From NCBI GenBank assembly GCA_051294905.1, contig CM119376.1, forward strand, positions 16,492,001-16,556,000: DNA of 64,000 bases, read 5' to 3'. A model generated the notes under the pieces. It saw nothing but the letters and a program-made list of their open reading frames with translations, did not search any database and was not told where the DNA came from. The DNA comes from Botryllus schlosseri. Taxonomy: Eukaryota. This document shows positions 9,710 through 61,972 of this stretch, in pieces; positions within the stretch are counted from its first letter, which is position 1, and each line of letters starts with the position of its first letter. Both the position numbers and the translations under genes were made by a program.

Positions 9710-17598
<7,889 letters not shown>

Positions 17599-23231: not shown

Positions 23232-26113
23232 ATCATCATCATCATTGGTTTATTAGCAATTTTATCAGTTCAATACATCACAAAAAATGCGATACAATGA
23301 AAAGACAGGAAGATGTCGAAGTGACAAGGAGTAGTCTATGGAATCTGACACCCACCTTGGTCTAGGCGATGTAAAGAGGAGGCATGCACACTGAATGAAA
23401 GTAAAGAAGATAGTATAGAAAAAGAATGCGACAAGAAATAGGGCGGCATGTCATGGGAAGCGAGATCGATAGGTCAGTCGTGGTCCGGTAATCTTGAGGA
23501 TGGACTGTATTTATTTAGTAGTAATTGCTTGTATTTCGACTTGAATGTGGACATGCTCGTCGACTGTCGGATGGCCGGCGGGATACTGTTCCACACATCA
23601 GGTCCGGCATATTTGATGGAGCGATGATCTTTTCGGTCGATCATATGATATTTGGACGACGTGGACGCGCGTGTGTTGTACTTGTGCGCTTTTGATTCAG
23701 AGGTAAAGAAGTCATTGAAATATTCGGGGCAACGACCGCAGTGAAACTGATACATAAACTTGGCGATTTCTAGTTTCCGCATATCTTCTATGTTTAGGAC
23801 GCCAAATCTCTTCAGCAGCGACTTATTGGATGGGCAGCCAGGCCCCTTTGGAGCCCTAGCTATGATTCGGAGTACTTTATGCTGTAGTTTCTGCATTGGC
23901 TTGAGTGCAGTTTTACTGGCAGCCCCCCAACAGAGGATGCCATAATGTAACTTCGATTGGATTAAGGATTTAAAGAGTATCAGAAGAACCCATGCTGGCA
24001 TGAAGCGCCCAAGGCTGTAGAACAGGCCGCACTTCGGTGATAATTTAGTTTCTAGGGACTGAATATGACTCTTCCAGGACATGTTCGAGTCCAGTAAAAC
24101 TCCGAGATATTTGGCATTATCTGTGTTGGAAACGGGCTGACCAGCGATATTAACGGTTAGGTTATTTTTTGAATTTACTGTCAGCAATTGCGATTTCGAG
24201 GCGTTTATGCAAGGGTTATTCTGGGCCGTCCACTCATGGACTTTGGGCATTTGGTCACCAGTCAGGGCATCCAGCTCTGCCGTCGAAGATGCGGAAGAGA
24301 GGAGGTGAGTATCATCAGCGAACAGTGTGGTGTTCAATGAGGAGGTTTCAAAAATGTCGTTGACATATAAGGTGAAAAGGACCGGTCCAAGTACTGAGCC
24401 CTGGGGCACACCACAGGTCACCGGGTGAGAAGAGGACAAGGTGTCTGAGATCGCAACCATTTGTTGGCGTCCAGTGAGGTAACTTTTCATGAGCTCAAGT
24501 TGTGGGCCCCGAAGTCCGTAACGCGCCAATTTCGAGATGAGAATTTTATGATCTACGCAGTCAAACGCTTTTTTTAGGTCGAGAAAAATGCTACATCCCA
24601 CATTTCGCTTCTCTGAGATATCATAGTACTGTTCGGCCACTGTTAGGAGGGCATGAGCGGTTTGGTGTTTGTTTCGGAAGCCAAATTGTTGAGGAGAAAT
24701 GACAGACATTTTTGCGAGGAATGAGGACAGGCGGGAGAGGAGCAACTTTTCGAATACAATCCCGAAGCATGGGAGAACGGATATCGGACGGTAGTTGGTG
24801 ACATTAGTTCTATCCCCAGCTTTGTGTACAGGGACTACTCTGGCTTTTTTTAGATAGCTTGGGTAGACTCCATTTTCTATCATGAAGTTGAAAAAATGGG
24901 CCATATATTGACCGATATGCAGGCTTATCATTTTTAAAAACCATGATGGGATTTGGTCATAGCCGTCGGCCTTGTGCGATTTCAGTTTGTGGATGGCTAC
25001 TTCTACTTCGTATTTGGTCGTAGGTTCAAGCACAATTGACCGGGATATCGATCTCACCTCTGACCTGGCCGACACAGGTTTTGTAATAGAAGAAGCAATA
25101 TTTGGGCCTACGTTACAAAAATATTCATTGAAGTGATTCGCGATGGCCGCGGGGTCTGAAAGTTTGTTTCCGGTATCCGAATTCACAATTTCCGAAACAG
25201 ACTTATGGCCTTGTTTTCGATGTAGGAGAGAGTTAAGTCCTGACCATGTTTTTCGAGTGTCCTTTATGTGTCTGTTGAAAAATCTCTCATTGTACTTTGC
25301 TTTTGCCTTGGAAATGAGATGCACGGTGCGATTCCTGAAACGTCGAAATCTTTCTCGTTCATGTTCTGGGCAGTTCTTGGTGTCTATTCGGTTATGCCAC
25401 CGGTTACGTTTACGGATAAGTTGAATCAGCTTTGTGGTCATCCACGGATTTCGCTTCAATTTTCTTTGACTTCTCGAAAGGCGCTGTAGAGGTGCAAATT
25501 GTTCCAGCAGTGATTTGATAGCAGACATAAACTCTACAAATTTTTCGTCAAAGTTGTTTACGGAGATGTGGGGGATGGCTGATGTTTTAAATTGATTGAA
25601 TGCGGCATCATCGAGCGCTTCTTCGTCCACTAACTCTCGTCGTCTGCAGAGGTGATATGTTTCGGGGGGTGTCCTTTGTTGTTCTTGTGATAGAAAACCA
25701 ATATGGCTGTGGTCACTGATTTTTGCCGAAATGACAAATGGAATGATTTCCATGTCGCGCGAGTTGGTATATATGTGGTCGATCAAAGTCCTTGACTTTT
25801 CGGTTATGCGTGTAGGCTCGGTGATCATTTGGTAGAGACCGGCGGATTTGACGGCGTTGGAGTATGCGTTGCCTTTGTGTTTTAGAAGGTTTATGTTAAT
25901 ATCTCCCGCAATGAAACACATCTTTTTGTCGCTGTTGACTTTGTCCAGTGAGCGCTCCAACGCTTTTGCGAATTGGTTCATGTTTTTCGTGGGATGACGG
26001 TATAATACGGCCACAAGAAAAGATTTGTGAATTCCAATTGGGTGATCAACTTCCAGCCATAGCTCTTCGCAATCTTTGACGTTCAGATCGTAGTCCGTGC
26101 AAAGCCGAATCAC
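23232..26113 (-). mobile_element. L2/CR1-group LINE, 5'-truncated within the endonuclease domain, with short (TGA)n tail
   Basis: 879-aa uninterrupted ORF followed by a roughly 240-nt 3' UTR and a tgatgatgatt tail at 23232-23245. The N-terminal APE motifs are absent and no TSD was found. Confidence 0.93.
23474..26113 (-). CDS. LINE ORF2 (partial APE endonuclease plus reverse transcriptase)
   Basis: Motifs LYRHP, AGDININLL, TLIDHIYTN and SDH (endonuclease); NYRPISVLP, QFGFR, FLDLKKAFDCVDH, GVPQGSVLGP, LFADD and KYLGV (reverse transcriptase). Confidence 0.93.
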   Translation of the reverse strand: MIRLCTDYDLNVKDCEELWLEVDHPIGIHKSFLVAVLYRHPTKNMNQFAKALERSLDKVNSDKKMCFIAGDININLLKHKGNAYSNAVKSAGLYQMITEPTRITEKSRTLIDHIYTNSRDMEIIPFVISAKISDHSHIGFLSQEQQRTPPETYHLCRRRELVDEEALDDAAFNQFKTSAIPHISVNNFDEKFVEFMSAIKSLLEQFAPLQRLSRSQRKLKRNPWMTTKLIQLIRKRNRWHNRIDTKNCPEHERERFRRFRNRTVHLISKAKAKYNERFFNRHIKDTRKTWSGLNSLLHRKQGHKSVSEIVNSDTGNKLSDPAAIANHFNEYFCNVGPNIASSITKPVSARSEVRSISRSIVLEPTTKYEVEVAIHKLKSHKADGYDQIPSWFLKMISLHIGQYMAHFFNFMIENGVYPSYLKKARVVPVHKAGDRTNVTNYRPISVLPCFGIVFEKLLLSRLSSFLAKMSVISPQQFGFRNKHQTAHALLTVAEQYYDISEKRNVGCSIFLDLKKAFDCVDHKILISKLARYGLRGPQLELMKSYLTGRQQMVAISDTLSSSHPVTCGVPQGSVLGPVLFTLYVNDIFETSSLNTTLFADDTHLLSSASSTAELDALTGDQMPKVHEWTAQNNPCINASKSQLLTVNSKNNLTVNIAGQPVSNTDNAKYLGVLLDSNMSWKSHIQSLETKLSPKCGLFYSLGRFMPAWVLLILFKSLIQSKLHYGILCWGAASKTALKPMQKLQHKVLRIIARAPKGPGCPSNKSLLKRFGVLNIEDMRKLEIAKFMYQFHCGRCPEYFNDFFTSESKAHKYNTRASTSSKYHMIDRKDHRSIKYAGPDVWNSIPPAIRQSTSMSTFKSKYKQLLLNKYSPSSRLPDHD

Positions 26114-50362: not shown

Positions 50363-52105
50363 CGTGGTAGCTGAATCTGGGATACTTACTATACGTTATG
50401 TACAACTGATTGGTGGTGCAAAACCGGAATATAACTTTCATAAGTTTTACGTTATGTTTATGTTGTAAAATGTGATTCAGCGAAAATCGGTGATCCGATG
50501 CATCATTATTTTAGGTGTCATTACATTATGTGGTTTAGAAATTATATTGGGTTACTGAAAAATCGCCCCGACTACTCGATATGCTTCGTTCGATGGACAT
50601 ATTTGCCGTAATCAAACAGCTGTGTGGTGGTAAAAATGCAGTTGTTTCATTGAAGCAGCAACATAATAAAGATGGATGTGTTCGTACAACAAAACAACAT
50701 GATTAAGTTCCTTTCGAAACGTGTCTGTGACAATGACCATTACTGTCATTGTCCTTCAACGAACATTGGTAAATATTCAATTTCGTCGCGTGGCATGCAG
50801 TTCGACTTCGAGGTGATGCGAACAAAGGATCTGCTAGCCTATAATAGGCCACGGAAAACTGCAATACATTTCGCCAAAATGCTCGTTGATGGACATTGTC
50901 AAATTGGACATGCACTGTTGCGCATTATCAAAAGAGGCATTTTCCATCTAAATCCTAATTTAATGTTTCAGTCCCCTTTTGTTATTGTTGATGGGTGTGC
51001 GCGCTCCTCTTTAATAAATTACTACTTTACCAGAAAAACCAGTATTTTCACTACCACGCATTTTTTTGCAAGAGTTTCGCATTAAAAATAATAATGTGGA
51101 ATAATTTGGCAACGAACCAACACAAATTATAAACCACAGAAAGTAATGACACCCGAAATTTAAATAGCATCGATCAGCTGACAGCGATTAGTTGGATTAG
51201 TAGTCTGGTACCACCATGGAAAATTCCATGCTGATACTCATTCATTCATATTTGCGCAGCTGTAAATAAAACGAAGACACGGAGATGGGACTCTATCGTC
51301 CTTATCACTTGCTCTATGCGACCACAACTACGGAAATGTTTTTCTCACTGCTCATTATTTGTCACTGTTGTAATTACGCGAAGGAATGAATCATTGATAG
51401 CGTCGGTAGGCGTGGCGTAGAGATACTGTTTTAGCAAGTATACCAATGAAAACTTGAACGAAGATGACTGACGGACTCATCGCTGGAGTATATACAATAC
51501 CCAGTATAACATTAGACCTATGTGAGGTGATTATCTGCGACTGTTACCCGTCAGTGTGTGATAATGTAGTTTTACTTAGCATTGGAATCAATGTCCTATG
51601 CTCACACAATTCCTTATCTTTTTTATATATTTTATGAAATTACTTCAACTTGGAGAATCATTGGGGTCAAGTGTAGAATACGGCCACCTCGAGAAAGTGA
51701 TCCCCATGACCATCACCGATCAGTGTTGCACCTGAAACTTCAGTGCTGCACCTGAAACTGTCGGAATTCAGAGTGCTTCACGTAGTTACCGACTATGCTC
51801 CCCACTAGACCCTATAAATCCTGTCAAGGTTCCATATTATATCTTATCATATTATTATATCTTGAATTCACAGATACACATGCCGGTGACGAGCAAGATT
51901 ACATTTTACATCGCTCGCTCGCATACCAGATGAACGGCTTGTACAAGAAATCGAAAGAAAGGGGAAAGGAAGCGACTTACTCCAATCTCTTCACCACATT
52001 ATGTATTGTGTATCGCATTTTTATCGAAAATATAAAAAATAAAACGCATGACGCCTATGCCCGCGCAGTTGCCCAGAAAAGACCCGACGTAAGAAAGTAC
52101 TCATG

Positions 52106-54530
52106 TACACTTATGTGAAGACACTCGCATAGTCGCGTATCATACCAAGTGTACTTTCCAGCCACAATAGTTATGTACAGACACTCGCATAGTCGGGTAT
52201 GATACCAAGTGTACTTTTCAGCCACAATAGTTATGTACAGACACTCGCATAGTCGCGTATCATACCAAGTGTACTTTTCAGCCACAATAGTTATGTACAG
52301 ACACTCGCATAGTCGGGTATGATACCAAGTGTACTTTTCAGCCACAATAGTTATGTACAGACACTCGCATAGTCGGGTATGATACCAAGTGTACTTTTCA
52401 GCCACAATAGTTATGTACAGACACTCGCATAGTCGCGTATCATACCAAGTGTACTTTTCAGCCACAATACTTATGTGAAGACACTCGCGTAGTCGCGTAT
52501 CATACCAAGTGTACTTTTCAGCCACAATACTTATGTGAAGACACTCGCATAGTCGCGTATCATACCAAGTGTACTTTCCAGCCACAATAGTTATGTACAG
52601 ACACTCGCATAGTCGGGTATGATACCAAGTGTACTTTTCAGCCACAATAGTTATGTACAGACACTCGCATAGTCGGGTATGATACCAAGTGTACTTTTCA
52701 GCCACAATAGTTATGTACAGACACTCGCATAGTCGCGTATCATACCAAGTGTACTTTTCAGCCACAATACTTATGTGAAGACACTCGCGTAGTCGCGTAT
52801 CATACCAAGTGTACTTTGCGGCCAAGGCTACTCATGTAGGTACTCTCCAATAATAGGGCATGATACCAAGTGTACTTTTCAGCCACAATACTTATGTGAA
52901 GACACTCGCATAGTCGCGTATCATACCAAGTGTACTTTGCGGCCAAGGCTACTCATGTAGGTACTCTCCAATAATAGGGCATGATACCAAGTGTACTTTT
53001 CAGCCACAATACTTATGTGAAGACACTCGCATAGTCGCGTATCATACCAAGTGTACTTTCCAGCCACAATAGTTATGTACAGACACTCGCATAGTCGGGT
53101 ATGATACCAAGTGTACTTTTCAGCCACAATAGTTATGTACAGACACTCGCATAGTCGCGTATCATACCAAGTGTACTTTTCAGCCACAATACTTATGTGA
53201 AGACACTCGCGTAGTCGCGTATCATACCAAGTGTACTTTTCAGCCACAATACTTATGTGAAGACACTCGCATAGTCGCGTATCATACCAAGTGTACTTTC
53301 CAGCCACAATAGTTATGTACAGACACTCGCATAGTCGGGTATGATACCAAGTGTACTTTTCAGCCACAATACTTATGTGAAGACACTCGCGTAGTCGCGT
53401 ATCATACCAAGTGTACTTTTCAGCCACAATACTTATGTGAAGACACTCGCATAGTCGCGTATCATACCAAGTGTACTTTCCAGCCACAATAGTTATGTAC
53501 AGACACTCGCATAGTCGGGTATGATACCAAGTGTACTTTTCAGCCACAATAGTTATGTACAGACACTCGCATAGTCGGGTATGATACCAAGTGTACTTTT
53601 CAGCCACAATAGTTATGTACAGACACTCGCATAGTCGCGTATCATACCAAGTGTACTTTTCAGCCACAATACTTATGTGAAGACACTCGCATAGTCGCGT
53701 ATCATACCAAGTGTACTTTCCAGCCACAATAGTTATGTACAGACACTCGCATAGTCGGGTATGATACCAAGTGTACTTTTCAGCCACAATAGTTATGTAC
53801 AGACACTCGCATAGTCGCGTATCATACCAAGTGTACTTTTCAGCCACAATACTTATGTGAAGACACTCGCGTAGTCGCGTATCATACCAAGTGTACTTTT
53901 CAGCCACAATACTTATGTGAAGACACTCGCATAGTCGCGTATCATACCAAGTGTACTTTCCAGCCACAATAGTTATGTACAGACACTCGCATAGTCGGGT
54001 ATGATACCAAGTGTACTTTTCAGCCACAATACTTATGTGAAGACACTCGCGTAGTCGCGTATCATACCAAGTGTACTTTTCAGCCACAATACTTATGTGA
54101 AGACACTCGCATAGTCGCGTATCATACCAAGTGTACTTTCCAGCCACAATAGTTATGTACAGACACTCGCATAGTCGGGTATGATACCAAGTGTACTTTT
54201 CAGCCACAATAGTTATGTACAGACACTCGCATAGTCGGGTATGATACCAAGTGTACTTTTCAGCCACAATAGTTATGTACAGACACTCGCATAGTCGCGT
54301 ATCATACCAAGTGTACTTTTCAGCCACAATACTTATGTGAAGACACTCGCATAGTCGCGTATCATACCAAGTGTAGTTTCCAGCCACAATAGTTATGTAC
54401 AGACACTCGCATAGTCGGGTATGATACCAAGTGTACTTTGCGGCCAAGATACTCATGTAGGTACTCTCGCATAATAGGGCATGATACCAAGTGTACTTTG
54501 CGGCCAAGATACTCATGTAGGTACTTTCCA
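52106..54530 (-). repeat. 60-bp tandem satellite array, left arm of the Merlin element (about 40 units)
   Basis: Unit gccacaatagttatgtacagacactcgcatagtcgggtatgataccaagtgtacttttca with a few recurrent variants. 61-bp variant units occur near 52820-52880 and 52940-53000, and type-II units near 54430-54530. Confidence 0.97.
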
Positions 54531-54648
54531 CAGCCCTGTACTCATCAAATCTTGTTTCCAGCCACAATACTCAGGTGTATCATGTTTATTTGTGAAAGAA
54601 CGAAACAAAGAAAATTGAACGAAATTGCAGGAATGGTGCATTCTCATA

Positions 54649-55815
54649 TTAAAATTGATACTCTGGATGAGTCGCAATCGCATGAATGATATCGGGGAAG
54701 TAATGTGCCCTATCTCTAGTTCTTCGCCACATCCACTCATCAATATAGGAGGGCACAAAACTTCTTACCGAACCATTCATGCGATTGAATTTTCTTTTGC
54801 AATCTCGCCATTGACTTTCAATATTATTGGTATGCACGCCGTCGGGTGCCACGTATAAATCCTTATGACACACCGATTTGTGCGTATAATTCAGGCCCAT
54901 TCCTGTTAACGAAATATAAATACTTTCATGAAAGTGATCGTTATCGTTGAAATATATATTTTTACCGTTTATGCCACGATATGCAGCCCATTGATCGGAC
55001 CAAATTTCAGTCCCTGGAGCAATGTATTGCCGAATAATCGGCAAAAGTGTACCGGCGTCGCGACGATCGACGAATCGCATGAAGCATTGACTGCATAAAA
55101 CATTTATTATTCTTTAAGTTTTGCTAACCTTGGGTGGTATTTTCTGTATACAAACTTCGTTGCAAGATCCACGCCTCCAAATATCCACTGTTGTGGGACG
55201 GGCCTTGCCTGGGCGTTTGCCCCACGGCCGCGCTTGGCTATGACAGACTCGTCAATAGCCACAACGTGTCCTAGACCACCAACGACGCCGGAGCCTCTCA
55301 GTAGCTCACTCGAGCAGACCTTGAAAATATCACAGAGTAATCATAGTGCCATGCTATACAATTAAACTTGGAAATTACCTCCCTGAAAAATTGACACCAG
55401 TCAATGCAGGTCCGATTACTGATCTTTAATTCGTGTATGATCGAGACCTGCAAATGGTCCTGTGACCAAAAGTAGAGGAGGTACAGTAGTTGCAATACCG
55501 TCAGATTGCTTTTGTAAAAGAAAGAACCAAGACGTATGCTCCAAAAATTCTTGCATTTCTGTGAATGAAAAATGTCACAAAATATTAGTTTCTGGCTCCA
55601 ACAAAAAAAAATGTATGACTTCCTACCGGACAACGCCAGGCGGTCTGATCTTTGACGTTCCTGAATTTTTCAGCGCATGGCACGCTGCATTGTGGGCAAT
55701 TCTGTTGCCTTGCAAGTAGTCCATGCTGCCTGAAAAACTGAATGGCTGCAGTGTTGCTTGACAGCGCGCCCATTCCAATGAGCTCTGGTATGCCTACACC
55801 AACTAAACTCGCCAT
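54649..55815 (-). CDS. Merlin/ISXO2-like DDE transposase, 5 exons, 303 aa, apparently intact
   Basis: Exons 55815-55627, 55558-55379, 55319-55156, 55090-54966 and 54902-54649 (912 nt); introns 68, 59, 65 and 63 bp, all GT-AG. N-terminal Zn-ribbon CPQC..WRCPKC, then VAIDES (D), WIFGG, IWSDQWAAY (D), HTNNIESQW (E) and YIDEWMWRR. Confidence 0.9.
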
Positions 55816-56275
55816 GCTTAGGCTACTGATAAATGTGGGCTATGAAATGAAATGATATATTATTTAGCGATGATTTGTTTTACAACTTTTATTACAACAT
55901 AAAATTATTCATAGATAGAAATCAGCCTAATTCTAAAGGCCACTATAGTTTCTACTGCGCCTAATTTTTAATTATATTCCTGCAAGTTTGCAAGTTTCTC
56001 TTTCCTGTTCATTCATTCGTTACTTGCATTCACATCTTCACCGCCTTTTGTTGACCAAACGCTGCTGAAGTTATTGCTCGACTTACACATGGAAGAGTCG
56101 TGTTCATCAGGCCCGGAAACTCTTCCACCGTGATCAATTATTAAGTTCATTGTTAATCACAATGTTTTTTCCGGTTTATGAGCATGTACCATTGTTGAAG
56201 ATGATACCTTCATGTGACCAATGTGGGTTGACGTACATAAGGACGCATTCTGACTGTACAATGCCTCTCGACATG

Positions 56276-56530
56276 CCTACATGTACCTACATGAGTATCT
56301 TGGCCGCAAAGTACACTTGGTATCATGCCCTATTTTGCGAGAGTACCTACATGAGTATCTTGGCCGCAAAGTACACTTGGTATCATGCCCTATTATTGGA
56401 GAGTACCTACATGATTATCTTGGCCGCAAAGTACACTTGGTATCATACCTATCATTGGAGAGTACCTACATGAGTAGCCTTGGCCGCAAAGTACACTTGG
56501 TATCATGGCCAATTATGCGAAAGTACCTAC
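56276..56530 (+). repeat. Short internal array of the related type-II 60-bp unit (about 4 units)
   Basis: Repeats of gagtacctacatgagtatcttggccgcaaagtacacttggtatcatgccctatt.., sharing aaagtacacttggtatcat with the main satellite. Confidence 0.9.
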
Positions 56531-57346
56531 ATGAGTATCGATGCCATTTCTTTTACATTGCTGGACAAGCTGGGATAAAGACCAATTTCAAGAACGTGCT
56601 CTTTGTCAAAGTCATCCAGCGATATGCTCTTTGTATGAAATATGTCAATGAATTCAACTGCATCGCACTTCACAAAGGCCCATTTGAAATTTTCCGGCAA
56701 TGGTATTGGCGTCCACATTAAACGGAGTACTGAATAGTCAGAATTCATTTTGTAGAGAAGGAATGTTGGAAAAGCGGGTGAATATTCACTTATTCAGTAG
56801 TTAAATTTCGTATCACAGTTAGAAATGTAGTGTTGGTACTAGGTTTTCTCTCCTCCAGTATAGGAAAGTGAGCATAATTTTCTTTGTAGGCTACTGTTGA
56901 CATTTCAAGAGTCACAGATTCGTTTAGAATGCGCCTAAACATCTCATCTATCCCCCTGAAGTTGCAAATTCAATTTGTTCAGATGCGACGTTAAATGTAC
57001 CAGGAAAGCAAGAAGAGATACCCATTTTCGATTACAAGATTATGAGTCGGCGATATTAGAGGAAAGTTGCTACTTCATTTCTCAGTTCATAGACTCGTGT
57101 AAGCATAGCTGCTTGACTTAATGCGTGAACATGACAGATATAGGCCTACAGGACATCGCCATATTGATTCTCTGCTTAGTAATATCTGGCGTAACTGATT
57201 CAGTTAATGAGACAAAAATCATATTAACAGTTTTCCCCATTGCAAGGAAGGACACCCTTATTGTCACACCCCATTAGAGTGGTAAACTATTTAAAAAAGT
57301 ATGGAACACCTTCGGTTGCGAGATACACTCGATTGATAAGCACTGA

Positions 57347-57440
57347 TCCAGTCGATGAATGGATGTGGCGTCGGACCAGAGAAAGAGATCATTACTTTTC
57401 GGACATTGTTCAGGAAATCGCCAGGCAACACCCAGTGTAA
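57347..57440 (+). pseudogene. C-terminal remnant of a second, diverged Merlin transposase
   Basis: DEWMWRRTRERDHYFSDIVQEIARQHPV* aligns with DEWMWRRTRDRAHYFPDIIHAIATHPEYQF* of the intact gene. The downstream cctgcaatttcgt segment also matches that gene's 3' flank. Confidence 0.85.
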
Positions 57441-57649
57441 AATGAGCCCTTTAATTTATTGAGATTTGACTGCTCAGAATTATCTAGTTATCGAAGTGTG
57501 CCTGCAATTTCGTAATTCCGTTTTTTTCTACATTTCGTTTCGTTTTTGTTTTGTTGATAAACGTGCTGCCATTGGCTATAGTTCGAGTCTATCTACATTT
57601 GACCGGACGTTGGAGTAGGAGTCAGGGTCAGGGCCATTTCTATAATATG

Positions 57650-59534
57650 CGAGTGTCTATACATAAGTATCGTGGCTGGAAAGTACACTTGGTATCATAC
57701 CCGACTATGCGAGTGTCTGTACATAACTATTGTGGCTGGAAAGTACACTTGGTATGATACGCGACTATGCGAGTGTCTGTACATAACTATTGTGGCTGAA
57801 AAGTACACTTGGTATGATACGCGACTACGCGAGTGTCTGTACATAACTATTGTGGCTGAAAAGTACACTTGGTATGATACGCGACTATGCGAGTGTCTTC
57901 ACATAAGTATTGTGGCTGAAAAGTACACTTGGTATGATACGCGACTACGCGAGTGTCTTCACATAAGTATTGTGGCTGAAAAGTACACTTGGTATCATAC
58001 CCGACTATGCGAGTGTCTGTACATAACTATTGTGGCTGAAAAGTACACTTGGTATCATACCCGACTATGCGAGTGTCTGTACATAACTATTGTGGCTGAA
58101 AAGTACACTTGGTATCATACCCGACTATGCGAGTGTCTGTACATAACTATTGTGGCTGGAAAGTACACTTGGTATGATACGCGACTATGCGAGTGTCTTC
58201 ACATAAGTATTGTGGCTGAAAAGTACACTTGGTATCATGCCCTATTATTGGAGAGTACCTACATGAGTAGCCTTGGCCGCAAAGTACACTTGGTATGATA
58301 CGCGACTATGCGAGTGTCTTCACATAAGTATTGTGGCTGAAAAGTACACTTGGTATGATACGCGACTACGCGAGTGTCTTCACATAAGTATTGTGGCTGA
58401 AAAGTACACTTGGTATGATACGCGACTATGCGAGTGTCTGTACATAACTATTGTGGCTGAAAAGTACACTTGGTATCATACCCGACTATGCGAGTGTCTG
58501 TACATAACTATTGTGGCTGAAAAGTACACTTGGTATCATACCCGACTATGCGAGTGTCTGTACATAACTATTGTGGCTGGAAAGTACACTTGGTATGATA
58601 CGCGACTATGCGAGTGTCTTCACATAAGTATTGTGGCTGAAAAGTACACTTGGTATGATACGCGACTACGCGAGTGTCTTCACATAAGTATTGTGGCTGA
58701 AAAGTACACTTGGTATGATACGCGACTATGCGAGTGTCTGTACATAACTATTGTGGCTGAAAAGTACACTTGGTATCATGCCCTATTATTGGAGAGTACC
58801 TACATGAGTAGCCTTGGCCGCAAAGTACACTTGGTATGATACGCGACTACGCGAGTGTCTTCACATAAGTATTGTGGCTGAAAAGTACACTTGGTATGAT
58901 ACGCGACTATGCGAGTGTCTGTACATAACTATTGTGGCTGAAAAGTACACTTGGTATCATACCCGACTATGCGAGTGTCTGTACATAACTATTGTGGCTG
59001 AAAAGTACACTTGGTATCATACCCGACTATGCGAGTGTCTGTACATAACTATTGTGGCTGGAAAGTACACTTGGTATGATACGCGACTATGCGAGTGTCT
59101 TCACATAAGTATTGTGGCTGAAAAGTACACTTGGTATCATGCCCTATTATTGGAGAGTACCTACATGAGTAGCCTTGGCCGCAAAGTACACTTGGTATGA
59201 TACGCGACTATGCGAGTGTCTTCACATAAGTATTGTGGCTGAAAAGTACACTTGGTATGATACGCGACTATGCGAGTGTCTGTACATAACTATTGTGGCT
59301 GAAAAGTACACTTGGTATCATACCCGACTATGCGAGTGTCTGTACATAACTATTGTGGCTGAAAAGTACACTTGGTATGATACGCGACTATGCGAGTGTC
59401 TGTACATAACTATTGTGGCTGAAAAGTACACTTGGTATCATACCCGACTATGCGAGTGTCTGTACATAACTATTGTGGCTGGAAAGTACACTTGGTATGA
59501 TACGCGACTATGCGAGTGTCTTCACATAAGTGTA
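57650..59534 (+). repeat. 60-bp tandem satellite array, right arm (about 31 units), inverted relative to the left array
   Basis: Reverse complement of the same unit. 61-bp variant units occur near 58230, 58770 and 59130. Confidence 0.97.
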
Positions 59535-60136
59535 CATGAGTACTTTCTTACGTCGGGTCTTTTCTGGGCAACTGCGCGGGCATAGGCGTCATGCGTTTTA
59601 TTTTTTATATTTTCGATAAAAATGCGATACACAATACATAATGTGGTGAAGAGATTGGAGTAAGTCGCTTCCTTTCCCCTTTCTTTCGATTTCTTGTACA
59701 AGCCGTTCATCTGGTATGCGAGCGAGCGATGTAAAATGTAATCTTGCTCGTCACCGGCATGTGTATCTGTGAATTCAAGATATAATAATATGATAAGATA
59801 TAATATGGAACCTTGACAGGATTTATAGGGTCTAGTGGGGAGCATAGTCGGTAACTACGTGAAGCACTCTGAATTCCGACAGTTTCAGGTGCAGCACTGA
59901 AGTTTCAGGTGCAACACTGATCGGTGATGGTCATGGGGATCACTTTCTCGAGGTGGCCGTATTCTACACTTGACCCAATCATTGCTGCTCACCTGTTATA
60001 TTAGGCAAAACGTACCGAGATTCCAGTAGCGCTTATCGATATAGTCTTCTAAAATTGTCTCTTTTTAGCCCAGGCTTACAAAGAAATACTTAATGCTTGA
60101 TTAGACTGAAACTATGCATATGAAACGGAACTTATC

Positions 60137-61972
60137 ATGAGCAGATTCCGGCAGTCCTCGATTGCGGATAATGTTATCAACGAGAATTCGAATGTAGGTT
60201 TGTCTGAAAGGCCGCTAATACGTTCAAATTCCAGCTTCTATAGAAGTCGTACATTGGAGCATTTGTCGGAAGAAAAGAAAGCAAAGCGGGTTCACTTTTA
60301 CCGTAACGGTGATCGATTTCACCAAGGTGCCACTTATGCTATATCTGGAACAAGGTTTCGTACATTCGATGCACTTTTAACGGACTTGACGAGGACACTA
60401 TCAGACACAGCCAATCTTCCGTTTGGTGTTCGGTCTATATTTGCTATCAAAGATTGGCGGAAGGTTGATTGCCTTCGCGATATTGAACATGGAGAAAGCT
60501 ACGTTTGCTCATCTGGAGAGGGTTGCAAAAAAATGGATTATCTTCAAAACACCACCCCAAACTGGTCTAAAAATAGACAAGGTGGGTTGAAATCACAGTC
60601 ATTAACAAGGCTTACAAACACAAGACTTTCTTTTAGCGACAAGAATTATCGCTTGATGAGCGAGAGAAAGTCTTTCAAGGCTAACCGAGATTTTATTCGT
60701 CCCAAGTTAATTACTGTTATCAGAAATGGTGTTAAACCTCGCAAGGCAATTAGGATACTTTTAAACAAGAAAACAGCCCACAGTCTCGAACAAGTTGCCA
60801 GCGAAATCACAACAGCCATAAAACTAGACACTGGAGCGGTACGGAAAATATACACACTTGCCGGTAAGGAGGTGAAAGAGCTCCGTGACTTTTTCGGTCC
60901 TGAGGAAGTTTTCATCGCTTGCGGATACGAAAAGTTAACGTATGAAGATTTCGAGATCGACAGTTCTGAGAAAAGTTTATGCAAATCTTATGAGACCCCA
61001 AGGGCGCGTCGACGAAGTTTGAAAATCCGCCCCGAAAGTGATCGAGAAACCGGCAGGCTGGTTCTGTCCAACAAAGCGCAGTCCACCATGTCTTTGAACA
61101 CTGTCGAACCGCTTATCGCCGAACGAAATTATCCCCCAAAGTTACTTGAAGAGTTCAATGTGCTTTCGAATATTGGTGACGGACATTATGCTTCGGTAAA
61201 AGAATGCATGAACCGAGCCACTGGGAAGCGTTACGCTTTGAAAGTGGTGCTTGCAGAAGATTCGAGCGATTGCAGATTTGACAACGAGACTACTATCCTC
61301 AAACAAATGCGTCATCCCAATATTGTAAGACTAGTGAGGGATTTTATCTCAGACCGGGGGACTTATGTTGTGATGGAATTAGCAAATGGCGGCGATCTGT
61401 TTGATGTAATTTCAAGAGGAACCAAATTCTCTGAAGACGACGCTTGTGGCATGCTGCACAACATTGCCAGTGCCTTGCTGTACCTCCACAACCGTAACGT
61501 TGTTCATCGTGACGTCAAACCGGAGAATCTTTTAGTGTATCTCTACAAGGATGGTACCAAGGCCCTTAAACTAGGTGACTTTGGGTTAGCCACAGTGCTG
61601 GCCGACAAACCACTCTACACAATATGTGGCACACCTACGTATGTTGCTCCGGAAATTATTCTACAAAAGGGCTACGGCCTTGAAGTAGATATATGGGCGG
61701 CGGGTGTAATCACTTATATATTACTGTCTGGTTCACCTCCTTTCAGCTCATCAACTGATAATCAGGAAGAGCTGTTTGATATTATCATTTGTGGGAGGCT
61801 GGAATTTCCATCGCCGTCATGTGATTGTATTTCACAGTCTGCACGCAGTTTGATCCAGGGAATGTTGCAGCACAGTAGGACTTCCAGGTTGACTGCTTCG
61901 GAAGTTCTAAATCATAATTGGCTATCGGAAGGAAATGTCTTTAATTCAGTTCGGGAGAGTATTGAAATTTGA
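60137..61972 (+). CDS. DCLK: Doublecortin-like Ser/Thr kinase (two DCX domains plus kinase), single coding exon, 611 aa
   Basis: Uninterrupted ORF. DCX1 contains FYRNGDRFHQG..RFRTFDALL..NLPFGVR and DCX2 contains RPKLITVIRNGVKPRKAIRILLNKKTAHS. Kinase motifs are GDGHYA, ALK, HRDVKPEN, DFG and CGTPTYVAPE. Confidence 0.95.
   Translation: MSRFRQSSIADNVINENSNVGLSERPLIRSNSSFYRSRTLEHLSEEKKAKRVHFYRNGDRFHQGATYAISGTRFRTFDALLTDLTRTLSDTANLPFGVRSIFAIKDWRKVDCLRDIEHGESYVCSSGEGCKKMDYLQNTTPNWSKNRQGGLKSQSLTRLTNTRLSFSDKNYRLMSERKSFKANRDFIRPKLITVIRNGVKPRKAIRILLNKKTAHSLEQVASEITTAIKLDTGAVRKIYTLAGKEVKELRDFFGPEEVFIACGYEKLTYEDFEIDSSEKSLCKSYETPRARRRSLKIRPESDRETGRLVLSNKAQSTMSLNTVEPLIAERNYPPKLLEEFNVLSNIGDGHYASVKECMNRATGKRYALKVVLAEDSSDCRFDNETTILKQMRHPNIVRLVRDFISDRGTYVVMELANGGDLFDVISRGTKFSEDDACGMLHNIASALLYLHNRNVVHRDVKPENLLVYLYKDGTKALKLGDFGLATVLADKPLYTICGTPTYVAPEIILQKGYGLEVDIWAAGVITYILLSGSPPFSSSTDNQEELFDIIICGRLEFPSPSCDCISQSARSLIQGMLQHSRTSRLTASEVLNHNWLSEGNVFNSVRESIEI

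What the first reader, a model, noticed from the sequence alone, without database searches (positions are those of the whole stretch)
51656..59984. 8.3-kb Merlin transposon whose inverted arms are extended by kilobase satellite arrays
Seen: a perfect TSD (AATCATTG), GG termini, about 440 bp of indel-free mirrored unique TIR, then 2.4 kb (left) and 1.9 kb (right) of the same 60-bp satellite in opposite orientations, and an intact transposase in the core. Established: Merlin elements have 8-9 bp TSDs, GG ends and TIRs usually at most a few hundred bp, and some contain tandem repeats. Inference: the element moved recently as one unit with effective arms of 2.3-2.9 kb, so it would act as a mobile satellite-DNA disperser. 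I do not know this architecture at this scale, but I could not search for it.
Basis: partly seen in the sequence, partly recalled or inferred. Interest (0 to 1): 0.9.

Follow-up and report, generated by a model that had tools for sequence, protein, structure and literature searches.

The report
Foldback-like Merlin transposon with repeat-filled arms
This is a real, recently inserted jumping gene of the Merlin family whose two inverted ends each carry about 2 kb of a 60-bp tandem repeat. It is a well-preserved example, but similar layouts are already known in zebrafish Merlin elements and in fly foldback transposons.

Summary
Observation confirmed. Element 51664-59976 (8313 bp) has a perfect 8-bp target duplication (AATCATTG). 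It has GG-initiated ends, 447-nt unique inverted repeats with 0 mismatches, and mirrored 60-bp arrays of 40 and 31 monomers. The transposase gene is intact once 4 GT-AG introns are removed: 303 aa, IS1595/Merlin domain, D146/D210/E248.

Contigs and RNA reads from other samples join the two flanks without the element. Other copies end exactly at 51664 with different flanks. So the element is mobile and this insertion is polymorphic.

New points:
- The monomer's invariant core repeats a motif at the very tip of the element (14 of 16 positions; 2 of 5000 shuffles reach this).
- The right arm is broken by 1.1 kb of foreign high-copy DNA plus a diverged mirrored copy of the transposase 3' end.
- The element sits 160 bp upstream of a doublecortin-kinase ORF, in transcribed DNA.

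The novelty claim is overstated. Repbase zebrafish Merlins have symmetric ~0.6-1 kb arrays near both ends, and Lopes et al. 2021 already proposed Merlin as a proto-satellite spreader. Galileo, Tetris and FB show the same design.

Contig depth suggests only a few hundred monomers genome-wide. An unchecked first-reader note of this scan (s1-243951) reports another copy on other DNA of this genome, with 3 versus about 21 monomers.

The parts
51656..51663 (.). left target-site duplication AATCATTG
   Evidence: identical to 59977-59984
51664..52110 (+). left unique terminal inverted repeat (447 nt), starts GGGTCAAG; tip motif CAAGTGTA-N5-CGGCCA at 51668-51686
   Evidence: 0 mismatches to the right TIR; other copies' flanks end exactly at 51664; tip motif
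51720..51759 (+). 2 x 20-bp subterminal direct repeat inside the TIR (mirrored at 59881-59920)
52111..54527 (+). left 60-bp tandem array, 40 monomers; the last 2-3 (54418-54527) are the diverged inner variant
54528..54648 (-). 3' untranslated region of the transposase gene, with AATAAA at 54585-54590
54649..55815 (-). Merlin/IS1595 transposase gene. Five exons: 55815-55627, 55558-55379, 55319-55156, 55090-54966, 54902-54649. Product 303 aa
   Evidence: Pfam PF12762, E 1.7e-14; tblastn to full-length homologues; three introns seen in a spliced contig of run X5; intact 912-nt CDS with GT-AG introns; DDE triad
55816..56282 (-). upstream region of the transposase gene (presumed promoter)
   Evidence: position only; depth about 6x the flank, like the gene
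56283..56539 (-). 4.3 inner-variant monomers of the right arm, mirroring 54418-54525 at 97%
56540..57642 (.). non-mirrored 1.1-kb block interrupting the right arm. 56600-57199 is a very high-copy repeat. 57351-57440 (+) is a diverged mirrored remnant of a Merlin transposase C-terminus with its stop codon
   Evidence: depth 67,000-86,000 against 23 for the flank; remnant; no Pfam, Rfam or Atlas identification
57643..59529 (-). right 60-bp tandem array, 31 monomers
59530..59976 (-). right unique terminal inverted repeat (447 nt)
59977..59984 (.). right target-site duplication AATCATTG

Best explanation
This is a structurally autonomous cut-and-paste DNA transposon of the Merlin (IS1595-like DDE) superfamily, with foldback-like arms.

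Each arm has a 447-nt unique terminal inverted repeat followed by a tandem array of a 60-bp unit. The invariant core of that unit copies a bipartite motif found at positions 5-23 of the element tip. The monomers are therefore most likely multiplied subterminal transposase-binding sites. They lack the terminal GG, so they would be bound but not cut (inferred).

The transposase (303 aa, 5 exons) would recognise the tips, excise the whole 8.3 kb and insert it with an 8-bp duplication. This copy inserted recently into the transcribed 5' region of a doublecortin-kinase gene and is absent from other individuals.

The arrays change by unequal exchange or slippage much faster than bases mutate. This explains arms that are base-perfect but differ in monomer number and order.

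The right arm has additionally picked up foreign repeat DNA. It also keeps an old mirrored copy of the transposase 3' end, as seen in Galileo elements.
For: Shown:
- Perfect TSD and zero differences in 2 x 447 nt of TIR.
- Pfam DDE_Tnp_IS1595, E 1.7e-14.
- Intact spliced CDS with canonical introns, three of them seen in a spliced contig.
- D146/D210/E248 lie in columns conserved in at least 90% of 16 aligned sequences (this model plus 15 full-length homologues).
- Empty site: 2 contigs of X5 and 6 RNA reads of X23 run from 51661 straight into the right flank. They match the expected empty site at 25/30 and 24/30 positions, against 6/30 and 5/30 for the filled site.
- X5's flank variants are absent from X1. 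X5's flank is therefore an allele, not a paralogue.
- Unrelated flanks abut 51664 (51663 in X23) in X5, X6 and X23.
- Only 5 exact monomer variants make up 61 of the 71 monomers. Blocks of the same order are shared between the arms.
- Tip motif: 14 of 16 invariant monomer positions match the tip; 2 of 5000 shuffles reach this.
Against: - No other full copy could be read, so it is not shown that other copies carry comparable arrays.
- Array lengths rest on the assembly alone; no long reads were laid.
- No RNA reads of X23 fall on the transposase gene. RNA runs hold only 5-7% of its words, so current expression is weak or rare.
- The spliced contig of X5 is from a copy about 5% different.
- The empty-site alleles read AATCAT+CA and AATCAT+CT rather than TG at the last two TSD positions.
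- Binding of the monomers by the transposase is untested.
Confidence: 0.8

Rival explanations
1. The element inserted with short arrays, and most of the 40 and 31 monomers were added afterwards at this locus by slippage, unequal sister exchange or hairpin-templated repair. On this reading it did not move with 2-3 kb arms.
For: The arms differ in monomer number and order beyond the first 12 monomers. An unchecked scan note reports another copy with 3 versus about 21 monomers. Summed depth at a monomer position is about 400x the flank, against 10-170x for TIR positions. The average arm therefore seems to hold fewer monomers than here (rough).
Against: There are no substitutions in 894 nt of TIR and the TSD is perfect, which leaves little time. 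The inner, diverged monomers are present in both arms, so an array already existed in both arms before this insertion. The depth figures are sums over contigs, not copy numbers.
Confidence: 0.2
2. The element is a recombinant or composite of two related Merlin elements. The left arm plus transposase comes from one element. The right end (transposase 3' remnant, 3' UTR, array, TIR) comes from another, joined head to head through nested insertion or template switching during gap repair.
For: A Merlin C-terminal remnant with its own stop lies on the opposite strand at 57351-57440. It faces the right array just as the real gene end faces the left array. It is only about 77% identical in DNA to the gene's own end. 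1.1 kb of unrelated high-copy DNA lies beside it. A scan note (s1-254019) reads it the same way.
Against: The outer 712 nt of both arms are identical, which is not expected of two different families unless they were homogenised. Galileo shows that a piece of the ORF end can be recruited into the opposite TIR within one lineage (PMC4168063). This rival does not conflict with the main reading of a mobile unit.
Confidence: 0.3
3. Assembly artefact: the mirrored arrays or their lengths were produced by mis-assembly of repeats or by a palindromic chimeric read.
For: Arrays of near-identical 60-bp units are hard to assemble. No long reads could be laid. Short-read contigs cover only parts of the array.
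Against: There are no Ns. The two arms are not a perfect palindrome. A unique 1.75-kb core with an intact gene lies between them. The TSD is exact, the empty site is seen in other samples, and the TIR ends are confirmed by other copies. At most the monomer counts could be wrong.
Confidence: 0.04
4. The 60-bp repeat is an independent genome-wide satellite that was captured by, or inserted into, a Merlin element secondarily.
For: None was found. It cannot be fully excluded without a whole-genome search.
Against: The monomer core copies the element's own tip motif. The arrays sit symmetrically in both arms directly after the unique TIR. The inner monomers are more diverged, as in an array that grew in place. 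Summed depth is only about 400x the single-copy flank, and 71 monomers lie in this element alone.
Confidence: 0.03

Closest known systems
Repbase zebrafish Merlin families Merlin-2_DR, Merlin-N5_DR and Merlin-1_DR (as tabulated in Lopes et al. 2021, PMC8101967, S1 Table)
   Same: Same superfamily. They have symmetric tandem arrays near both ends: Merlin-2_DR has 79 bp x 12.5 at 847-1832 and x 9.7 at 12117-12880; Merlin-N5_DR has 113 bp x 5.2 in each arm with TIRs of 1000 bp. Merlin-2_DR has a conserved domain and DDE motif.
   Different: The arrays here are about 2-2.5 times longer (2.4 and 1.9 kb) and have far more copies (40 and 31). The monomer is 60 bp and unrelated in sequence as far as can be told. 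The Repbase sequences themselves could not be compared, and the inverted orientation of their arrays is inferred from the symmetric coordinates.
Galileo (P superfamily, Drosophila), a foldback-like transposon
   Same: Long TIRs are extended by expansion of internal direct tandem repeats, by insertions of other TEs, and by recruitment of internal sequence. [quoted passage not shown] All three features are seen here.
   Different: Galileo has a different transposase superfamily (P, not IS1595/Merlin). From general knowledge, it also has a different TSD length and different termini.
Tetris (Drosophila virilis) foldback transposon
   Same: Its TIRs contain internal tandem repeats (about 220 bp) that vary in number. 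It is discussed as a source of satellite DNA (PMC4079207).
   Different: Tetris is non-autonomous and its repeats also form kb-size arrays outside the element. Here the element encodes its own transposase, and no evidence of large independent arrays was found.
Drosophila FB (foldback) elements and IR/DR-type Tc1 elements such as Sleeping Beauty (from general knowledge, not tested here)
   Same: Their arms are built from repeated units related to the terminal sequence (FB). They carry extra internal copies of the transposase-binding site inside each inverted repeat (IR/DR).
   Different: They belong to other superfamilies. IR/DR elements have two sites per arm, not 30-40.

Membership tests
Merlin superfamily (eukaryotic IS1595/IS1016-like DNA transposons) | transposase with the DDE_Tnp_IS1595 domain | tested here: met
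   PF12762, E 1.7e-14, 54.5 bits against a cut-off of 27, on ORF 54649-55080. 2763 homologues at E<=0.001; the full-length ones are about 300 aa.
Merlin superfamily (eukaryotic IS1595/IS1016-like DNA transposons) | conserved D, D, E catalytic residues, with about 50-70 aa between the first two blocks | tested here: met
   D146 (AIDES), D210 (WSDQW) and E248 (NNIES). Spacings are 63 and 37. All lie in columns conserved in at least 90% of the 16 aligned sequences. The spacing range is from PMC8101967.
Merlin superfamily (eukaryotic IS1595/IS1016-like DNA transposons) | 8- or 9-bp target-site duplication | tested here: met
   Exact 8-bp AATCATTG on both sides. The empty site in other samples holds a single 8-mer.
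Merlin superfamily (eukaryotic IS1595/IS1016-like DNA transposons) | terminal inverted repeats that start with GG | tested here: met
   GGGTCAAG at both ends. The rule is stated in PMC8101967.
Foldback-like transposons (structural class: FB, Galileo, Tetris) | very long inverted arms containing internal tandem repeats that vary between arms and copies | tested here: met
   Arms of 2864 and 2334 bp, with 40 and 31 monomers. Variation between copies is known only from an unchecked scan note.
Foldback-like transposons (structural class: FB, Galileo, Tetris) | transposase of the FB (Mutator-like) or P superfamily | tested here: not met
   The transposase is IS1595/Merlin type. The resemblance is one of architecture, not descent.
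Satellite DNA | long arrays at many loci independent of a mobile element | tested here: inconclusive
   There are no arrays outside the element in the window. Summed contig depth at a monomer position is about 400x the flank. A whole-genome search was not possible.

The most novel reading that the evidence does not exclude
The 60-bp monomers are amplified transposase-binding sites copied from the element's own tip (CAAGTGTA-N5-CGGCCA, without the terminal GG). This Merlin would then carry 30-40 extra binding sites per arm, an extreme form of the IR/DR design. The number of sites would tune its own transposition, either by helping synapsis or by titrating the transposase. That would create a selectable link between array length and mobility. 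The element would also be a tractable natural series for asking how satellite-like arrays arise from protein-binding sites.
Probability: 0.2. Interest if true: 0.55.

Novelty: new member of a known kind. Interest (0 to 1): 0.33.

Why it matters
This is a clean, apparently recently active example of a transposon that encodes its own enzyme and also carries kilobase repeat arrays in its arms. Most foldback-type elements known are non-autonomous or decayed.

Three properties make it a usable test case:
- The gene is intact.
- The insertion is polymorphic.
- The monomer copies the tip motif.

It could be used to ask whether subterminal arrays are functional binding sites, and how transposon repeats seed satellites.

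It does not change what is known about Merlin. Arrays in Merlin arms, and their proposed role as proto-satellites, are already on record.

Tried and rejected
- Exact-product look-up of the 143-aa last ORF found no contig.
- A profile search of 5.8 billion proteins, using the exon pieces aligned to homologue P0002, found no close relative of this transposase. Hits were ranked against P0002, to which the spliced model is 45% identical. Other copies could therefore not be fetched.
- Two metagenome scans, one with the TIR tip and one with the monomer, found nothing.
- The search of earlier findings by sequence was blank.
- Rfam found nothing in 51000-60600.
- The 1.1-kb block gave no Pfam hit and only weak Atlas leads. 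My recollection that its frameshifted ORF pieces resemble a hAT-type transposase C-terminus is untested.
- A first test of tip-to-monomer similarity by simple match count was weak (15/24; 63 of 2000 shuffles). Only the test on the invariant positions was convincing.
- The long ORFs through the arrays (548, 256, 208 and 188 aa) are repeat artefacts, not genes.
- A synonymous versus non-synonymous count against the X5 contig (about 6 against 7 changes) is too small to show selection.
- Literature searches for 'Merlin' with 'foldback' or 'satDNA' found no description of a foldback-type Merlin beyond PMC8101967.
Full report
**Observation.**
- AATCATTG stands at 51656-51663 and again at 59977-59984.
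- Between these lies an 8313-bp element that begins GGGTCAAG and ends with its reverse complement.
- The unique part of the terminal inverted repeat is 447 nt, with no mismatch and no indel.
- Read in register, the two arms are identical for the first 712 nt.
- Tandem Repeats Finder gives a 60-bp array of 39.9 copies at 52111-54506 and one of 31.4 copies in the opposite orientation at 57646-59529.
- Neither the 25-nt tip, nor the monomer, nor any other part of the element occurs elsewhere in the 64-kb window.

**Transposase.**
- The last ORF of the minus-strand gene (54649-55080) matches Pfam DDE_Tnp_IS1595 at E 1.7e-14.
- A search of 1.84 billion representative proteins found 2763 relatives at E<=0.001. 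The full-length ones are about 300 aa.
- tblastn with seven of these covers residues about 10-302 of a 308-aa homologue in five collinear pieces on the minus strand.
- A 470-nt contig of run X5 is about 5% different from this copy. It skips 54902-54964, 55091-55155 and 55319-55378.
- With a fourth GT-AG intron (55626-55559) the CDS is 912 nt and open throughout, giving 303 aa.
- In an alignment with 15 full-length homologues (32-49% identity), D146, D210 and E248 fall in columns conserved in at least 90% of the sequences. The spacings are 63 and 37 residues.
- An AATAAA lies about 60 nt after the stop codon.
- The gene is therefore intact but intron-bearing. The four defining Merlin features are all met: IS1595 domain, DDE triad, 8-9-bp TSD and GG termini (feature definitions from PMC8101967).

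**Arrays.**
- Every monomer carries the word TACCAAGTGTA at a spacing of 60 or 61 nt. There are 40 such words in the left arm and 31 in the right.
- Five exact variants account for 61 of the 71 monomers. A sixth, a 61-bp inner-type variant, accounts for 5.
- Written as letters from the tip inward, the left arm reads BCDDCEABDCEFAFABCEABEABDCABCEABEABDCAGHI.
- The right arm reads BCDCAFABDCEFCEABDCEAFABDDEAJCBK.
- Positions 1-3 and 7-12 agree, and further blocks are shared with gaps.
- The arms thus differ by rearrangement of identical units, not by base changes. This is what fast unequal exchange or slippage on a very young sequence would give.
- The innermost monomers of the left arm (54418-54527) are a diverged variant. 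The same variant forms a separate 4.3-copy array at 56283-56539, in mirrored orientation and 97% identical.

**Tip motif.**
- Across all 15 monomer variants, 16 positions within a 19-nt stretch never vary.
- That pattern matches the TIR at 14 of 16 positions at nt 5-23 of the tip (CAAGTGTA, five bases, CGGCCA).
- Only 2 of 5000 shuffles of the 447-nt TIR reach 14.
- The inner-type monomers carry the bipartite motif exactly. It occurs 13 times in the element and nowhere else in the window.
- In the monomers the motif is preceded by ATAC, not by the terminal GGGT.
- I infer that the monomers are multiplied copies of the transposase-binding part of the tip, without the cleavage end. This has not been shown. 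A scan note on the same stretch (s1-254005) suggested it, and the test above supports the sequence part of that claim.

**Right arm.**
- Between the inner-variant monomers and the main right array lies a 1.1-kb block (56540-57642) that has no counterpart in the left arm.
- Its part at 56600-57199 has a summed contig depth of 67,000-86,000 in run X1, against 23 for the single-copy flank. It therefore belongs to a very abundant repeat.
- Frameshifted ORF pieces on its minus strand gave no Pfam or Atlas identification.
- At 57351-57440 (+) there is a 29-residue Merlin C-terminus with its stop codon. It faces the right array as the real gene end faces the left array.
- Its DNA is about 77% identical to the real gene end over 44 nt (score 43, against at most 30 in shuffles).
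- The two 3' UTRs share the word CCTGCAATTTCGT.
- This is either an old recruitment of the gene end into the inverted repeat or a mark of recombination with a second Merlin element (scan note s1-254019).
- I cannot decide between the two. Neither affects the outer structure.

**Mobility (single read-laying run, on 51200-57199).**
- Empty site in X5: two contigs of X5 run from the left flank up to 51661 and continue with sequence that matches the right flank.
- Empty site in X23: six raw RNA reads of X23 do the same.
- These sequences agree with the expected empty site at 25/30 and 24/30 positions. They agree with the filled site at only 6/30 and 5/30.
- X5's left-flank contig differs from the window at six positions. 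X1 shows none of these variants (0 of 23.3 depth). X5's flank is therefore an allele in another individual, not a paralogue.
- The empty alleles read AATCAT followed by CA or CT, where the duplication has TG. The 30 nt beyond also differ at several positions. I read this as polymorphism, but an excision footprint is not excluded.
- Other copies: contigs and reads with unrelated flanks begin exactly at 51664 (X5, X6), at 51663 (X23) or at 51661 (the same flank in X5 and X6). This fixes the element's end and shows other insertions.
- Depth (summed contig depth, not a copy number): single TIR positions are about 10-170 times the flank. The transposase and its upstream region are 6-15 times. A monomer position is about 400 times.
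- This suggests tens of ends, a handful of coding copies and a few hundred monomers, of which 71 are here.
- That speaks against a large independent satellite. It also hints that this copy's arrays are longer than average.

**Expression.** No reads of X23 (about 6% of the run was read) fall on the transposase gene. RNA-type runs hold only 5-7% of its words. Apart from the spliced X5 contig from a sibling copy, there is no sign of strong expression.

**Context.** The element ends 160 bp upstream of a 611-aa ORF with two doublecortin domains and a protein kinase domain (60137-61972). RNA reads bridging the empty site show that the target lies in transcribed DNA. That is consistent with a young, possibly harmful, insertion.

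**Comparison with what is known.**
- Lopes et al. 2021 (PMC8101967) report internal tandem repeats in several Merlin families. [quoted passage not shown]
- Their S1 Table of Repbase elements lists Merlin-2_DR with 79-bp arrays of 12.5 and 9.7 copies at symmetric positions (847-1832 and 12117-12880).
- The same table lists Merlin-N5_DR with 113 bp x 5.2 in each arm and TIRs of 1000 bp, and Merlin-1_DR with TIRs of 1000 bp containing 44-bp repeats.
- Outside Merlin, Galileo, Tetris and, from general knowledge, Drosophila FB elements have the same design.
- The present element is thus a larger and very well preserved member of a known kind.
- I found no paper that calls a Merlin element foldback-like. 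The tip-motif origin of the monomers is not, to my knowledge, reported for Merlin.

**Limits.**
- I could not read any other full copy of the family.
- I could not lay long reads.
- I could not compare with the Repbase sequences themselves.
- An unchecked first-reader note (s1-243951) reports another Merlin copy on another piece of this genome, with 3 versus about 21 copies of a 60-bp unit.
- Several other notes report foldback-type elements with satellite arms in this genome. None of these was tested here.

Noticed in passing
window 60137-61972 (+): An uninterrupted 611-aa ORF with two doublecortin domains and a protein kinase domain (doublecortin-like kinase type). It starts 160 bp downstream of the element. 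RNA reads and contigs from other samples cross the empty site, so the insertion lies in this gene's transcribed 5' region.
   Followed up: partly
window 51630: Six RNA reads of run X23 join a non-genomic sequence ending ...ACTATTCTGTATTTGAGTATTT to position 51630. There is no AG acceptor in the window at that point. It could be an upstream exon, a spliced leader or a polymorphism.
   Followed up: no
window 56600-57199: A very high-copy repeat, with summed contig depth about 3000 times the single-copy flank. It carries frameshifted ORF pieces on the minus strand and gave no Pfam, Rfam or Atlas identification. Contigs show many variants and a variable 77-80-nt segment at 56873-56951.
   Followed up: partly
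window 23474-26113 (-): An 879-aa ORF with endonuclease and reverse transcriptase domains (LINE-type retrotransposon).
   Followed up: no
window 52111-54417 and 57700-59529: The two main monomer variants differ by GTATCATAC versus GTATGATAC, which are reverse complements of each other, together with a linked C/G change four bases upstream.
   Followed up: no
window 51600-52199: RNA reads of X23 cover the unique TIR on both strands. Nearly all fit only partly, so they probably come from read-through of other copies. Most copies in X1 carry T rather than A at 52032, so this copy belongs to a minority variant there.
   Followed up: no
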